Below, one piece after another: positions 1,918 to 37,949 of a DNA stretch of 64,000 nucleotides (positions are counted from its first letter, which is position 1; each line of letters begins with the position of its first letter). This DNA comes from Obrimoposthia wandeli. Taxonomy: Eukaryota. The translations under genes were made by a program, and so were the position numbers. Below the pieces are notes generated by a model. That model saw nothing but the letters and a program-made list of their open reading frames with translations. It was not told where the DNA came from and did not search any database. The DNA lies in NCBI GenBank assembly GCA_977020255.1, contig CDROCS010002357.1, positions 1 through 64,000 of the forward strand, given 5' to 3'.

Positions 1918-2218
1918 TTGTTTTAGTAAAAGTTAGCGCTGTCCGCTTTGGTTTTTGTTGCTCAGTAGCTCGTAGGCTTTACGTTAGCGATATTTCGTTA
2001 GTGAGTGTCTGCAGATAATCATAAATCAGAGGATTTATGCTTTTTAACAGGACAGTAAAGAACTAAAGTACAGTTTTTGTGACAATAATTATAAAAAGTC
2101 GGGTTTGAATCTATATTTAGAGCTAAATTTTGATCATTATTGGAATAAACTTTAACCGAAAGAATTAGATTAAATGCTGTTTGAATTTGAAAAACGGCGA
2201 CGAAAAGAGAGAGAATCA

Positions 2219-7431: not shown

Positions 7432-8253
7432 TTGATTCAAAAAAACAAAGCACGCCCAGGCCGTCCTGTTATTAACAAAAAAAACAGCGGTCAAGTCCAG
7501 TCGTTGTATCGTGGTTTAGCACTATTAGAAAAAATAGCAGATGCGCAATCGGGCATTTTATTAACAGATTTAGCTGAGCAATTAGATTTACCCGCCTCCA
7601 CGACACACAGGCTACTTAATACCCTAGAAGGGCAGGGGTTTGTAAGAAGGGAGCCTGCGCAAGAGCTATGGTTTATTGGTACCACAGGTTTTAAAATTGG
7701 GAATGCTTTTTTAGCGAGCCGTGACTTTGTTAGACAGGCCGAGTCCTTTATGCAGGAATTAGTCGCTGAGGTGGGTGAAACTTCAAACCTATCAATTCTA
7801 CAAAATGGGCAAGCATTGATCATCGCGCAACAGCAATGTAATGAAATGATGCGGATGATGGTGCCTTTAGGTAGTTGCTCACCTTTACATGCTTCTGGAG
7901 TAGGTAAAGCAATTATGGCGGCGCTGCCGCGGATTGAACGTGACCACCAAGTGGCACAATTAACTTTGCAAAGCATTACACCCTGGACGGTAACGAGTAA
8001 AGATGAGCTTACACAACATTTATCTCAAACAGCAGAGCAACAATGGGCGTTTGATGATCAAGAGCATGCAGTGGGTTTGCGTTGTGTTGCAGCTTGTTTA
8101 TATGATGAAAAAAGTTACCCTTTAGCCGCTATATCTGTATCCGGCCCACTGGCGCGTATTGATGATAAAAGGGTGATGTTACTAGGTGAAAAAGTTAAGC
8201 AAACAGCAATGCTCATTACCGACTTTATTGGCGGGAAGTGGCCTTCAAAGTAA
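7432..8253 (+). CDS. iclR: IclR-family regulator (IclR/AllR/BhcR glyoxylate-sensing branch)
   Basis: GQVQSLYRGL, STTHRLL, GETSNL, PLHASGVGKA closely follow E. coli IclR as recalled. Confidence 0.8.
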   Translation: MIQKNKARPGRPVINKKNSGQVQSLYRGLALLEKIADAQSGILLTDLAEQLDLPASTTHRLLNTLEGQGFVRREPAQELWFIGTTGFKIGNAFLASRDFVRQAESFMQELVAEVGETSNLSILQNGQALIIAQQQCNEMMRMMVPLGSCSPLHASGVGKAIMAALPRIERDHQVAQLTLQSITPWTVTSKDELTQHLSQTAEQQWAFDDQEHAVGLRCVAACLYDEKSYPLAAISVSGPLARIDDKRVMLLGEKVKQTAMLITDFIGGKWPSK

Positions 8254-8340
8254 GGAAGATTAAATCTTCTGCTAGATGGCAGGAGCTTTTAAACAAGTAA
8301 AAAAACCGACAATTAAAGTGATTATCGGCTCGCTTAAAAA

Positions 8341-8388
8341 AAGAGTAAAAATAACCTACGCCTTGCAGGCGTAGATTTTATTTTTACT
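8341..8388. terminator. bidirectional terminator between iclR and eda, interrupted by a MITE
   Basis: CTACGCC-TTGCA-GGCGTAG stem flanked by A and T tracts. Removing the MITE restores AAGAGTAAAAATAA/TTATTTTTACTCTT pairing. Confidence 0.8.
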
Positions 8389-8647
8389 CATTGCTGTCCG
8401 GTTAAAAAGTGTAAGCTCTCTAATTCATTGATTTGTGGTTTTCTAGCATAGTTAGTTCCCATCCAGAAACAGATGCCTACTGCGACCGGCTCACTGGATC
8501 AATCTGAGCACCACTAGATATAGTTATTTGGAATGACCAAACGCCCATATCTAGTAGCACACATCTTGAACGCTCAGCCAAAAATTCTTTTGGTTAGCGC
8601 AAAATCAATGAATTAAAGAGTAACAAAAATTAAACCGGACACTAATG
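8389..8647. mobile_element. 259-bp non-autonomous IS4-family MITE
   Basis: Ends CATTGCTGTCCGGTT...AACCGGACACTAATG resemble the ends of the IS at 35663-36944. Direct repeat ATTTTTACT at 8380-8388 and 8648-8656. No ORF in the track. Confidence 0.85.
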
Positions 8648-8704
8648 ATTTTTACTCTTAAGTAAGTGCAATACAGGATGAGGTAATAGTTAAAGCAGTA
8701 GCGT

Positions 8705-9358
8705 TTAGTTTTGATAGCAATTGTTTAAGCTCTCTTTTACTATTTGAGTGATTGCTGGCCAATCTTGTTGTTCTATTAGCGCTTTAGGTGAAAGCCATGA
8801 ACCCCCAACACACATAACGTTATCTAAAGATAAAAAATGCTGCGCATTTTCTTGGGTAATGCCACCTGTTGGGCAAAACCTTACCTGTTCAAAAGGGCCT
8901 TGTAAGGCTTTTAGCATAGGATACGAGCCAGCAGCTTGTGCAGGAAAAAACTTACAACGAGAGTACCCCAGTTCAAGTGCTTGCATTAGTTCTGATGCAC
9001 TGCTGATACCTGGTAGTAAAGGTACTTTGTTATCTTGACCTTTAAGTAATAAATTGTGTGTGATGCCAGGGCTTATAACTAAGGTTGCCCCTGCATCAAT
9101 AGCTTGTTGATATTGATCAGGATTAACAATGGTACCAGCCGCGACCTTCATTTGAGGAAGCTCTTGAGCAATCAGCTGTATTGCTTTTAAAGCTGCTTTG
9201 GTTCTAAGTGTTATTTCAATAACGCCTATTCCGCCCGCTAATAAAGCTCTTGCTAGAGGAATTGCATCTTTAGCTGAATCTATAGCGACCACTGGAATAA
9301 TTGGCGATTGAGTACAAAAACTATCAATCAGTGAGACGTTTTGTCTATCAGTTTGCAT
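8705..9358 (-). CDS. eda: KDPG/KHG aldolase
   Basis: IEITLRT, AAGTI, ISPG, KFFPA, FCPTGGI, VGGSWL. Confidence 0.96.
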   Translation of the reverse strand: MQTDRQNVSLIDSFCTQSPIIPVVAIDSAKDAIPLARALLAGGIGVIEITLRTKAALKAIQLIAQELPQMKVAAGTIVNPDQYQQAIDAGATLVISPGITHNLLLKGQDNKVPLLPGISSASELMQALELGYSRCKFFPAQAAGSYPMLKALQGPFEQVRFCPTGGITQENAQHFLSLDNVMCVGGSWLSPKALIEQQDWPAITQIVKESLNNCYQN

Positions 9359-35652: not shown

Positions 35653-35662
35653 AACTAAAAAT

Positions 35663-36944
35663 CACTAGTGTCCGGCTTAAAAAAGATGTGAAGCTATAGA
35701 GCTTTAACCACGGGGATTACAGTAAAATAGTGTTAACTAGACAGCTATTTTCCAAACCTGAGGTTAAGCGTGAAACATTCTAACAGCATTTTCAATCAAC
35801 TTTTAAAATTTATTCCCCGTCATACTTTTCAAAAAGTGGTTGATCGACATAACGGCGATTACCGGACGCGCACTCTTTCATGCTGGGATCAATTGGTTGT
35901 TCTGCTCTTTGCGCAGCTTAATAGCCAGACTTCATTAAGAGCAATTGAAACGACCTTTAACAGCCAAAGATCTAAACTTTATCACTTAGGCACAAGCCCT
36001 ATTAGCCGCTCATCTTTATCGGATGCTAACGGTAACCGGCCAACTGAAATTTTCAGTGAAACGTTCTATTATTTGCTCAATAAAGTGCGTTCAAAACTTC
36101 CTCAAGTTGATACTAGCCAGATGATAAGGTTGATTGACTCGACCACGATTGATTTGAATCTTAATCAGTTTAAGTGGGCAACGTTTCGTTCAAAGAAGGC
36201 CGGGATAAAGCTGCATACCGTGTATGACCCTACTGCAGCAGTCCCTGTATACTTTTCTTTAACTGAAGCCAAAACTAACGATGCTAAAGAATTGAATAAT
36301 TTACCGATGATGTCAAATACGACCTATGTTGTTGATCGAGCATATAATAATTACAGCTGGTTTTATTCTCTGGATCAGGATAACTCTAGGTTTGTCGGTC
36401 GAATGAAGACAAACACTTGTTATAAAGTGGTGAAAACAAGGGCTTCTATTGGTATGGGGGTCGTTGCAGATGAAATTATCCGCCTAAGCAGTGCCAAAGG
36501 AAAGAAGGATTGCCCAATTGATTTACGCCGTGTCAGCTTCGTTCGAGAAGAAGATCAAAAAGAGCTCGTATTTATCACCAATGATTTATCGCGTTCAGCG
36601 GTTGAGATCGCTGCATTATATAAACAGCGTTGGGAAATAGAGCTGTTCTTTAAATGGATCAAACAGAACCTCAAGATAAAGCGCTTTATCAGCCAAAATA
36701 GAAACGGGGTGATGATTCAGGTCTTGGTAGCACTCATCTCTTACCTGCTTTTAAAGCTGACGCAGTTAACCCATTTAAGTAAGCAAACACTCTATCAGAT
36801 CTGTCTAATAATCGGTGCAAATTTGATGGAACGTAGAGACATAATGGAGCTTCTAAATCCCTGCTCTGAACGGCTAAAATTAGACAAAAAAAGCGTGGAA
36901 CATAGGCAATATGATTTATTAAAATACTTAACCGGACACTAGTG
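35663..36944 (+). mobile_element. IS4-family insertion sequence (1282 bp)
   Basis: Perfect 13-bp TIR CACTAGTGTCCGG; 9-bp TSD ACTAAAAAT at 35654-35662 and 36945-36953. Confidence 0.95.
35770..36942 (+). CDS. IS4-family DDE transposase
   Basis: IDSTTI, VVDRAY, YKQRWEIELFFKWIK (YREK motif). Stop codon lies inside the right TIR. Confidence 0.95.
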   Translation: MKHSNSIFNQLLKFIPRHTFQKVVDRHNGDYRTRTLSCWDQLVVLLFAQLNSQTSLRAIETTFNSQRSKLYHLGTSPISRSSLSDANGNRPTEIFSETFYYLLNKVRSKLPQVDTSQMIRLIDSTTIDLNLNQFKWATFRSKKAGIKLHTVYDPTAAVPVYFSLTEAKTNDAKELNNLPMMSNTTYVVDRAYNNYSWFYSLDQDNSRFVGRMKTNTCYKVVKTRASIGMGVVADEIIRLSSAKGKKDCPIDLRRVSFVREEDQKELVFITNDLSRSAVEIAALYKQRWEIELFFKWIKQNLKIKRFISQNRNGVMIQVLVALISYLLLKLTQLTHLSKQTLYQICLIIGANLMERRDIMELLNPCSERLKLDKKSVEHRQYDLLKYLTGH

Positions 36945-37949
36945 ACTAAAAATAATCAATTATTAGAAGAGTGGTAAGAACTGGTAAATATGCTTTACTT
37001 AGTATTAATAAATAAAAACGTTAGTAGTAGTGTAAAGATATTTTTATAGCTAACAAAATACTTAGCTGCAAAACTGGTTTAATAATAGACAATATGTGAA
37101 TCTATTGATATTTACATTCAGGGCGGGTCGCTAAGGGTTGTATAGCTTGGCAGAAGAAACTTTACACATTAAGGTTCTTGCTAGACTTTATGATTAACAG
37201 CCCAGCTAATGGCCGCAGACGCTTGAGTTTTGACGGTTAGATGTGGATTAAACAGCGAAGATGTTAGGAAGCCAATAGAAATGTTACTTCTCAGCTTTTG
37301 CCTTTAATGAGACAAGCTAAAAGCCGTGAATGTTGGTTGGTACGTTTAAAGTCGACTTTCACTTGCTGAAATCTGAATGTTTTTGTTCAAGCAGGTTAAT
37401 GAGCACTTGTATCGAACTGGAATGATTTTATTTAGATTACTAAATTTCACAATGAGAATTTTAACTTCAGAGCTGGATTATAGATTTAACGCAGTAATCT
37501 TTATCGAGCACCCATAGCAAAAGTTTACCTTTAAAAAAGCCTCGCCATTCATCATTATCAGCGATAAACTGAGGCTATATTTATGCAGTGATTCTAGAGT
37601 AATTTAGATTCTATTAATTTAGTTCTTTTTTGACCTGCACAATGACAACAGCTACCTCTAGAAGTAAAAAACTCAGTGAGGGGTCAATTCTTTTGAGGAT
37701 TAAAAGATTTGGATATTGGCAGGAGTCGTTACCGATTAAATAAGTAAGCTAACTAGTTTATAGACATCATAATTTGATAAATACTCCTAGAGTGCACGTT
37801 ATAAATTAATCAATAAGGATTAATAACTAAGTTAGAACAATAAAATCAGTGTTATAGATCAGTACTTCTTCCTTGGTAGTTAGTTTCGAAAAGGTTAGTG
37901 ATATGCCAGGTCAGTTGAAAGTTGTTAAAACAGGTAATAAGGGGCTCTA

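What the first reader, a model, noticed from the sequence alone, without database searches (positions are those of the whole stretch)
8380..8656. Unannotated 259-bp IS4-derived MITE with an exact TSD, cognate to the IS 27 kb away
Left end CATTGCTGTCCGG-TTAAAAA-G-TGT-AAGCT aligns over ~30 bp with the IS left end CACTAGTGTCCGGCTTAAAAAAGATGTGAAGCT. Right end AAACCGGACACTAATG matches the IS right end TAACCGGACACTAGTG. It is flanked by an exact 9-bp repeat ATTTTTACT, the same TSD length as the IS. Removing it restores a long terminator stem (AAGAGTAAAAATAA...TTATTTTTACTCTT), which is independent evidence of insertion. The interior does not resemble the transposase gene, so it is not a simple deletion derivative. 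Inference: a non-autonomous element mobilised in trans by this or a related IS4 transposase.
Basis: partly seen in the sequence, partly recalled or inferred. Interest (0 to 1): 0.72.

Follow-up and report, generated by a model that had tools for sequence, protein, structure and literature searches.

The report
Nested IS4-type miniature transposon insertion
The 259-base insert between two sugar-metabolism genes of a marine bacterium is a gene-less jumping element from a 153-base family with about 170 copies, whose ends match a resident IS4-type jumping gene, and it later received a broken copy of a second small jumping element; it is well proven but an ordinary kind of bacterial mobile DNA.

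Summary
Window 8389-8647 is a real insertion with an exact 9-bp target duplication (ATTTTTACT). A related 5.6-Mb genome (G188, about 85% identical DNA at this locus) has the same site empty, with the 9-mer present once.

The anatomy needs revising. The mobile unit is not 259 bp. It is a 153-bp MITE family ("MITE-A"): about 170 copies in this assembly, 33 of 38 examined copies with 9/9 or 8/9 duplications, and 34 of 35 intergenic. The window copy is a unique composite. A 3'-truncated copy of a second MITE family ("B", 159-bp core, TAnnTA duplication, about 70 copies) sits in its centre, which explains the "unrelated interior".

MITE-A ends share CAyTnnTGTCCGGyTwA with the 1282-bp IS at 35663-36944. 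That IS is IS4 family and fits IS4Sa-type features, including a YREK motif and 9-bp duplications. The two also share an A-N7-T target preference. The end differences fall at positions that vary across this IS clade.

Elsewhere in the assembly, an IS plus a divergent MITE are flanked as one 2549-bp unit by a perfect 9-bp repeat. Mobilisation in trans by this IS or a sibling is therefore likely but untested.

Other first readers of this scan had already noted the 153-bp family on other pieces of this assembly. Verdict: a new member of a known kind.

The parts
8341..8388 (.). Long hairpin of the bidirectional terminator between the convergent IclR-type regulator gene and eda. The 5' arm is 8341-8354, the inner GC hairpin 8355-8374, and the 3' arm 8378-8388 (which is also the target 9-mer).
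   Evidence: Fold energies are -26.3 kcal/mol for the restored site and -24.3 for the present sequence. Terminator-like hits occur on both strands. Equivalent hairpins are present in G188, L082 and L083.
8380..8388 (.). Left copy of the 9-bp target-site duplication ATTTTTACT.
   Evidence: Read directly. The 9-mer occurs once at the orthologous site of G188 (L090:2484-2492).
8389..8454 (+). MITE-A left arm (66 bp), with the terminal inverted repeat CATTGCTGTCCGGTTAAAAA. Its last 6 bp (TAGTTA, 8449-8454) are the target of the nested element B.
   Evidence: Aligned to uninterrupted 153-bp copies. BLAST gives 92% identity over 61 bp.
8455..8571 (+). Nested copy of MITE family B. It holds core positions 1-117 of 159 and is truncated at the 3' end; about 42 bp of B, its right duplication and about 11 bp of the MITE-A centre are missing.
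   Evidence: It is 97-99% identical to 7 other B copies. Alignment with full-length copies shows the truncation. The family count is 72.
8572..8647 (+). MITE-A right arm (76 bp), ending in TTAAACCGGACACTAATG.
   Evidence: Shown. The terminal 20-mer is identical to 75 other copies.
8648..8656 (.). Right copy of the 9-bp target-site duplication ATTTTTACT.
   Evidence: Read and confirmed against the empty site.
35663..36944 (+). A 1282-bp IS4-family insertion sequence, the candidate autonomous partner. Both ends read CACTAGTGTCCGG. It is flanked by the 9-bp duplication ACTAAAAAT at 35654-35662 and 36945-36953.
   Evidence: Sequence and ends. There are four copies at 97-100% identity in the assembly.
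35770..36942 (+). Transposase gene (390 aa) with DUF4372 and DDE_Tnp_1 domains and an intact Y-2-R-3-E-6-K motif.
   Evidence: Pfam hits. NCBIfam transpos_IS4_1 scores 269.7 bits against a cut-off of 115. Translation.
7432..8253 (+). Upstream flanking gene, an IclR/BhcR-like transcriptional regulator.
   Evidence: NCBIfam hits. Orthologs with conserved synteny.
8705..9358 (-). Downstream flanking gene eda (KHG/KDPG aldolase), convergent with the regulator. Its transcript must now cross the 259-bp element before reaching the hairpin and T-run.
   Evidence: NCBIfam hits. The effect on the transcript is inferred.

Best explanation
Window 8389-8647 is a copy of a 153-bp non-autonomous DNA transposon (MITE-A). 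It inserted, with a 9-bp staggered cut, into the 3' arm of the terminator hairpin between an IclR-type regulator gene and eda. This happened after this bacterium split from its relative G188.

Later a member of a second MITE family (B) landed in a TAGTTA site at the centre of that copy. A deletion of about 55 bp then removed B's right end and a few bases of MITE-A. Both MITE-A termini remain intact.

MITE-A has no gene. It is moved in trans by a DDE transposase of the resident IS4-family clade, most likely the 1282-bp IS that has four intact copies, one of them 27 kb away. That transposase recognises the shared terminal motif CAyTnnTGTCCGGyTwA and makes the 9-bp duplication at A-N7-T sites.

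Shown here: the insertion, its boundaries, the family, the duplications, the empty site, the nesting, and the shared ends and target preference. Inferred: which transposase acts, the order and mechanism of the internal deletion, and any effect on eda transcription.

The confidence of 0.85 applies to the nested-MITE insertion and to mobilisation by this IS clade. For the window-type IS specifically as the driver it is about 0.6-0.7.
For: **Insertion**
- Exact 9-bp duplication.
- G188's orthologous locus matches the query up to window 8389 and again from 8648, with a 10-bp overlap. It carries ATTTTTACT once.
- More distant relatives L082 and L083 also lack the element, in conserved synteny.

**Family**
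- Uninterrupted 153-bp copies exist.
- The right-end 20-mer has 170 matches against 8 for the control, 76 of them exact.
- Of 38 copies, 21 have perfect and 12 have 8/9 duplications, against 0.4% of random flank pairs.
- 34 of 35 copies are intergenic.
- The element folds as a long hairpin, z = -3.8.
- The reverse presence/absence case also exists: filled in G188, empty in this assembly.

**Nesting**
- Element positions 61-183 match at least 41 other places that lack MITE-A ends.
- Full B copies have a 159-bp core, 16-bp inverted ends and a TAnnTA duplication identical in 19 of 25 copies.
- The 259-bp form occurs only once.
- A second, independent B-in-A nest sits at a different position (L028).

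**Link to the IS**
- Four inward-facing end matches in the window, against 0.04 expected.
- End identities of 16-17/20.
- Same duplication length and the same A...T bias: A at position 1 in 24/33 and T at position 9 in 24/33.
- The transposase is intact with a YREK motif.
- Across 43 metagenomic relatives, the positions where MITE and IS ends differ (3, 5, 6) are the variable ones. CATTGCTG and CATTAGTG occur as ends of full-length ISs.
- PMC2266710 reports a relaxed third nucleotide for the IS4Sa subgroup.
- A 2549-bp unit (IS, then a 1114-bp spacer, then a divergent MITE) is flanked by a perfect ATTAGAAGT repeat at the IS left end and the MITE right end.
Against: - No experiment links any transposase to these ends.
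- MITE-A termini are not identical to those of the window IS: 3 differences in the first 8 nt on the left and 1 on the right. Similarity stops after about 33 nt on the left and about 17 nt on the right.
- The same motif is shared by a second intact paralog (62% aa identity) and a decayed 83% variant whose right end equals the MITE's. The partner is therefore not uniquely identified.
- G188 has about 97 candidate MITE-A copies, including lineage-specific insertions, but only transposase fragments in its draft assembly.
- The window copy belongs to an older subfamily (84.5% to the consensus), so it may no longer move.
- Copy counts are for a 1.35-Gb multi-organism assembly and may pool more than one strain.
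Confidence: 0.85

Rival explanations
1. The element is a MITE of this IS clade, but the window-type IS is not what moves it. The driver was or is another clade member: the 83% variant lineage (now frameshifted), the 62% paralog, or an element since lost or horizontally supplied.
For: The right end of the 83% variant (CATTAGTGTCCGGTT) equals the MITE-A right end, whereas the window IS has CACTAGTG. The paralog on C4206 is intact and has its own perfect 9-bp duplication. G188 holds many MITE-A copies without an intact transposase. The end motif is conserved among transposases only 36-64% identical.
Against: The window-type IS is the only member with several intact, near-identical copies. The subterminal left-end similarity (TTAAAAA..TGT.AAGCT) is to this lineage, not to the paralog. 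The 2549-bp IS-plus-MITE unit involves a window-type IS copy.
Confidence: 0.25
2. The 259-bp composite arrived at this site as one piece. In this reading B had nested in MITE-A, and the deletion had already occurred, at a donor site, and the composite then transposed here using the intact MITE-A ends.
For: Both MITE-A termini match the consensus over the terminal 20 nt. IS4-family transposition is cut-and-paste (established knowledge from Tn5 and Tn10), so a donor copy need not survive. The duplication is still perfect.
Against: No second 259-bp copy exists. The B part is 97-99% identical to other B copies, while the MITE-A arms are at most 88% identical to any other copy. That pattern fits a young B insertion into an older resident copy.
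Confidence: 0.15
3. It is not a transposon insertion at all. The repeat would be a REP-like structural element, a recombination product or an assembly artefact.
For: Nothing beyond the general fact that intergenic palindromic repeats exist. No Rfam family matches.
Against: The evidence against is the exact 9-bp duplication, a precise empty site in G188, about 170 copies with their own different 9-bp duplications, and IS-type terminal inverted repeats.
Confidence: 0.02

Closest known systems
MITEAba12 and its proposed parent ISAba12 (Acinetobacter; PMC6382973)
   Same: Both are small gene-less elements with terminal inverted repeats and 9-bp target duplications. In both, the parent was assigned by matching the ends and duplication length of a co-resident DDE-transposase IS.
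   Different: MITEAba12 is 113 bp, its TIRs match ISAba12 perfectly, it has 1-22 copies per genome, and it was caught moving in the laboratory. MITE-A is 153 bp with about 170 copies. Its ends match its IS only at the clade-conserved positions, and no movement has been observed.
IS4 family, IS4Sa subgroup (De Palmenaer et al. 2008, PMC2266710)
   Same: The IS at 35663-36944 fits the tabulated features: size 1150-1750 bp, ends CA------T, YREK present, direct repeats of 8-10 bp, relaxed third nucleotide.
   Different: Placement in that subgroup was not tested by phylogeny. The nearest named elements found (ISGme2, ISRm16) are only about 40% identical, and the paper lists no MITEs for the family ('MITE' occurs 0 times).
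BOX, RUP and SPRITE repeats of Streptococcus pneumoniae inserting into one another (reviewed in PMC10969869)
   Same: Different small repeat families cluster and insert into each other in intergenic regions.
   Different: The host, the sequences and the transposase families all differ. Here the order of events can be read from a truncated inner copy and an empty site in a relative.
Compound transposons of the Tn5/Tn10 type (own knowledge)
   Same: The 2549-bp unit in L034 uses one outer end of an IS and one outer end of a second element carrying the same end motif. It is flanked by one 9-bp duplication.
   Different: One flank is a 153-bp MITE rather than a second IS. The cargo is a decayed IS6-like transposase fragment, not a resistance gene.

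Membership tests
Prokaryotic MITE | Small size and no coding capacity | tested here: met
   The family unit is 153 bp. No ORF of 40 aa or more lies inside 8389-8647.
Prokaryotic MITE | Terminal inverted repeats | tested here: met
   The two ends (CATTGCTGTCCGGTT and CATTAGTGTCCGGTT) are inverted copies of each other. The arms pair over about 50 nt, and the fold has z = -3.8.
Prokaryotic MITE | Target-site duplication of fixed length, different at each copy | tested here: met
   The duplication is 9 bp. 21 of 38 copies are perfect and 12 of 38 are 8/9, while random flank pairs reach 8 or more in 0.4% of cases.
Prokaryotic MITE | Multiple dispersed copies | tested here: met
   The end 20-mer has 170 matches against 8 for the control, spread over about 25 contigs. 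There are 97 candidates in G188.
Prokaryotic MITE | Evidence of mobility: filled and empty orthologous sites | tested here: met
   The window site is empty in G188. A filled G188 site is empty in this assembly.
Prokaryotic MITE | Ends shared with an autonomous IS | tested here: met
   Ends are 16-17/20 identical to the window IS, and all clade-conserved positions are shared.
Prokaryotic MITE | Mobilisation in trans by that transposase | not testable with these tools
   This needs a transposition or binding assay. The only indirect support is the 2549-bp IS-plus-MITE unit with one 9-bp duplication.
IS4 family (for the IS at 35663-36944) | DDE_Tnp_1 transposase with the Y-2-R-3-E-6-K motif | tested here: met
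   PF01609 at 96.9 bits, NF033592 at 269.7 bits, and YKQRWEIELFFKWIK in the translation.
IS4 family, IS4Sa subgroup | Size 1150-1750 bp, ends CA------T, direct repeats 8-10 bp | tested here: met
   The IS is 1282 bp, its ends read CACTAGTGT, and four insertions have 9-bp duplications. Criteria are from PMC2266710 Table 1.
IS4 family, IS4Sa subgroup | Transposase clusters with named IS4Sa members | not tested
   No tree with ISfinder reference sequences was built. The nearest named hits are ISGme2 and ISRm16 at about 40% identity.
IS630/ERIC-type TA-bounded MITE (considered for the nested element B) | Simple TA dinucleotide duplication | tested here: not met
   The duplicated block is TAnnTA with a variable, directly repeated nn (19 of 25 identical). 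The duplication is therefore 2, 4 or 6 bp including nn, not TA alone.
IS630/ERIC-type TA-bounded MITE (considered for the nested element B) | Sequence similarity to ERIC | tested here: not met
   B has no match in 5,426 E. coli genomes in distant mode. It has no Rfam match either.

The most novel reading that the evidence does not exclude
The nested element B would be the miniature form of a transposon type not yet described. It makes a TAnnTA duplication, no autonomous partner was found, and it occurs in 9 of 190 genomes of the family. Separately, MITE-A would keep spreading in a lineage (G188) that has no intact cognate transposase, which implies cross-mobilisation by a distant enzyme or repeated horizontal re-seeding.
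Probability: 0.1. Interest if true: 0.5.

Novelty: new member of a known kind. Interest (0 to 1): 0.3.

Why it matters
This gives a cleanly documented, high-copy MITE family (about 170 copies in a genome of roughly 5-6 Mb) tied to an IS4Sa-like IS clade. The 2008 survey of the IS4 family lists no MITEs for it.

The locus records a readable order of events: insertion after speciation, then a second MITE nesting, then an internal deletion.

In practice it warns annotators that about 240 short repeats of two families pepper the intergenic regions and terminators of this bacterium. It also offers a natural substrate set for testing which end positions an IS4-type transposase needs. It does not reveal a new mechanism.

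Tried and rejected
- **Rfam.** A scan of 8000-9000 at E<=1 gave only sub-threshold chance hits on the terminator hairpin and nothing on the element.
- **Promoter and terminator scan.** No site was found inside 8389-8647, so no regulatory role can be argued.
- **Deletion derivative of the IS.** Rejected, because there is no interior similarity.
- **The 259 bp as the family unit.** Rejected, because the full length matches only itself.
- **Global MAFFT alignments.** Those across the insertion misplaced the right flank. They were replaced by an alignment of the excised site.
- **Autonomous partner of B.** A search among all loci in hand found only a tandem pair of B copies.
- **Other collections.** B has no match in E. 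coli genomes and MITE-A has none in plasmids.
- **Metagenome scan with the transposase.** It found no relative above 64% identity, so no IS with ends fully identical to MITE-A over more than about 19 nt.
- **Further loci.** After no more loci could be cut from whole genomes, so the B copies and transposase fragments of G188 were seen only as table rows.

Full report
**What is at the coordinates.** A 259-bp element at 8389-8647 begins CATTGCTGTCCGG and ends CCGGACACTAATG. It is flanked by ATTTTTACT at 8380-8388 and 8648-8656. It lies between the stop of an IclR/BhcR-like regulator gene (7432-8253, + strand) and the stop of eda (8705-9358, - strand).

It has CACTAGTGTCCGG at both ends and its own 9-bp duplication, ACTAAAAAT. 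A 17-nt IS-end pattern with up to three mismatches finds exactly four sites in the 64-kb window: the two IS ends and the two element ends, each facing inward. Shuffles give 0.04 expected.

**The assembly.** The window is contig C2357 of a 1.35-Gb, 6912-contig assembly. Judging by earlier notes of this scan (Colwellia-, Photobacterium- and Oleispira-like pieces), it holds many marine bacteria. The regulator's closest public orthologs are in an uncultured Oceanospirillaceae MAG (76% aa) and a sea-ice gammaproteobacterial MAG (73% aa). Both share the gene order Lrp, IclR, eda, pgl and a 490-aa gene.

**The element is a composite.** Searching the whole assembly with the 259 bp gave one full-length match, itself. 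It also gave at least 41 matches to positions 57-183 only. BLAST against the fetched loci then showed the two ends (1-61 and about 186-259) lying next to each other, without that core, in several loci. Alignment defines a 153-bp unit.

Used as a query, that unit returns 41 scored full-length matches at 84-100% identity out of 213 candidates. A count of its terminal 20-mer with up to two mismatches gives 170 sites against 8 for the reversed control, 76 of them exact, on about 25 contigs.

Further properties of this 153-bp family, which I call MITE-A:
- Of 38 distinct copies, 21 have perfect and 12 have 8-of-9 flanking 9-bp repeats. Unrelated flank pairs reach 8 or more in 0.4% of comparisons.
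- 34 of 35 copies are intergenic.
- The unit folds into a long hairpin (z = -3.8).

**The interior.** Positions 8455-8571 belong to a second family, B. Full copies have a 159-bp core with 16-bp inverted ends (GTGCCCATCCAGAAAC and its complement). They are flanked by a duplicated TAnnTA in which nn varies from copy to copy; the 6-mers are identical in 19 of 25 copies. An internal 20-mer occurs 72 times against 1 for the control.

The window copy starts right after a TAGTTA in the centre of MITE-A (8449-8454) and is 97-99% identical to seven other B copies. It stops after core position 117. About 42 bp of B, the right-hand duplication and about 11 bp of the MITE-A centre are missing. A second B-in-A nest, at a different position and with a full-length B, exists in L028.

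B is older and more widespread than MITE-A: it is found in 9 of 190 genomes of the family, against 2 of 190 for MITE-A. I found no autonomous partner for B. It has no match in E. coli genomes or Rfam.

**Proof of insertion.** Among 190 genomes of the family of the Oceanospirillaceae MAG, one 5.6-Mb genome (G188) carries MITE-A. It also has the orthologous locus at 84-86% DNA identity. The match to the left flank ends at window 8389 and the match to the right flank starts at 8648. The two overlap by 10 bp in G188.

Read directly, G188 has ATTTTTACT once, at L090:2484-2492. With the element and one repeat copy removed, the window aligns colinearly with G188 (132 of 173 identities). The two more distant relatives also lack the element.

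The converse case exists too. A MITE-A copy in G188 (duplication TTTCGAAAA / TTTCCAAAA) corresponds to an empty site on contig C2749 of this assembly. The family was therefore active in both lineages after they split. In a tree of 38 copies, the four G188 copies sit basal to a burst specific to this assembly. The window copy belongs to an older subfamily: 84.5% to the consensus and 87-88% to its nearest relatives.

**The terminator argument.** The restored site folds into a 14-bp AT-rich stem enclosing an 8-bp GC hairpin (-26.3 kcal/mol). The present sequence keeps 12 of the 14 outer pairs (-24.3 kcal/mol), because the duplicated 9-mer is itself the 3' arm and the element's first base is C. 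Removal therefore restores little, and this is not independent evidence of insertion.

The geometry does matter in another way. For the + strand gene the hairpin still precedes the element. For eda on the - strand the element now lies between the gene and the hairpin plus T-run. The eda transcript probably carries the 259 nt in its 3' end. This is an inference and was not tested.

**Link to the IS.** The transposase (390 aa) has DUF4372 and DDE_Tnp_1 domains, passes NCBIfam's IS4 model and has an intact YREK motif. The IS fits the IS4Sa row of Table 1 in PMC2266710: 1150-1750 bp, ends CA------T, repeats of 8-10 bp, relaxed third nucleotide. I did not build a tree with reference elements, and the nearest named ones (ISGme2, ISRm16) are about 40% identical.

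The assembly has four intact copies at 97-100% identity, one intact 62% paralog with ends CACTACTGTCCGG and duplication ATCCTCGAT, and decayed copies that include an 83% variant.

MITE-A ends share 16/20 (left) and 17/20 (right) positions with the window IS, and about 27/35 on the left. The differences are at positions 3, 5 and 6. Among 80 metagenomic relatives of the transposase (36-64% identical), 43 show the motif CA[C/T]T-NN-TGTCCGG. The NN and position 3 vary in these, and CATTGCTG and CATTAGTG occur as ends of full-length elements, with 9-bp duplications. The MITE thus differs from the IS only where the clade itself is free to vary.

The IS and the MITE also share target bias. A is at the first position and T at the last position of the 9-mer in 24 of 33 MITE sites each, and in the IS sites ACTAAAAAT, ATGCAACTT and ATCCTCGAT.

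An earlier first-reader note (s1-232403) led me to check L034. There an IS copy, a 1114-bp spacer with IS6-like transposase fragments, and a divergent 153-bp MITE form a 2549-bp unit. It is flanked by a perfect ATTAGAAGT at the IS left end and the MITE right end. This looks like one transposition event that used one end of each.

**What remains open.** No tool here can show which transposase acts. The right end of the 83% variant equals the MITE's right end. G188 has many MITE-A copies but only transposase fragments in a draft assembly. I therefore put about 0.6-0.7 on the window-type IS as the main driver and 0.25 on a sibling. Whether the composite arrived whole or B nested in place is also open. 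The youth of the B part relative to the arms, and the absence of any second 259-bp copy, favour nesting in place. Read-level tests were not possible.

**Comparison and verdict.** This is a textbook MITE in every feature that could be tested. It is analogous to MITEAba12/ISAba12 but far more numerous. Elements nested in one another are already known from pneumococcal repeats. The 153-bp family had also been noticed by other first readers on other pieces of this assembly (s1-250324, s1-198784). It is a new member of a known kind, well supported and of modest interest.

Noticed in passing
window 8455-8571; full copies e.g. L020:1454-1620, L065:278-444: Second MITE family 'B'. It has a 159-bp core, 16-bp inverted ends and a duplicated TAnnTA with variable nn (19 of 25 identical). 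There are about 72 copies in the assembly, and it is present in 9 of 190 genomes of the family. No autonomous partner was found.
   Followed up: partly
L028:1326-1663 (G000 contig C4649): A second, independent case of a full-length B copy nested in a MITE-A copy. It sits at a different position (after CTCTAATTA in the left arm), with an irregular right junction.
   Followed up: partly
L034:233-2781 (G000 contig C1089:705526-708074): A 2549-bp unit made of an IS copy, a 1114-bp spacer with IS6-like transposase fragments and a 253-bp internal repeat, and a divergent 153-bp MITE with IS-like CACTAGTG ends. It is flanked by a perfect 9-bp ATTAGAAGT, so it looks like a compound transposon with a MITE as one arm.
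   Followed up: partly
L042 (G000 contig C4206:108936-110042 and flanks): An intact paralogous IS of the same clade. Its transposase is 62% identical, its ends read CACTACTGTCCGG, and it has a perfect 9-bp duplication, ATCCTCGAT.
   Followed up: partly
G188 (whole genome; e.g. L085, L087-L089): This relative has about 97 candidate MITE-A copies, up to 96% identical to copies in this assembly, while the orthologous DNA compared at two loci is 84-88% identical. Its draft assembly shows only fragments of the transposase gene.
   Followed up: partly
L004:1506-1834 (G000 contig C4529): Two B copies lie head to tail and share one TAGTTA junction. The second copy is only about 70-76% identical to the first.
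   Followed up: no
window 1940-1989: A weak match (76% over 50 bp, minus strand) to the right arm of MITE-A, possibly a decayed fragment.
   Followed up: no
window 8303-8388; L082:4880-4975; L083:4830-4935; L090:2405-2495: The intergenic region between the regulator gene and eda keeps the same two-hairpin layout in four genomes, although the stems differ in sequence. It looks like a conserved bidirectional terminator.
   Followed up: partly
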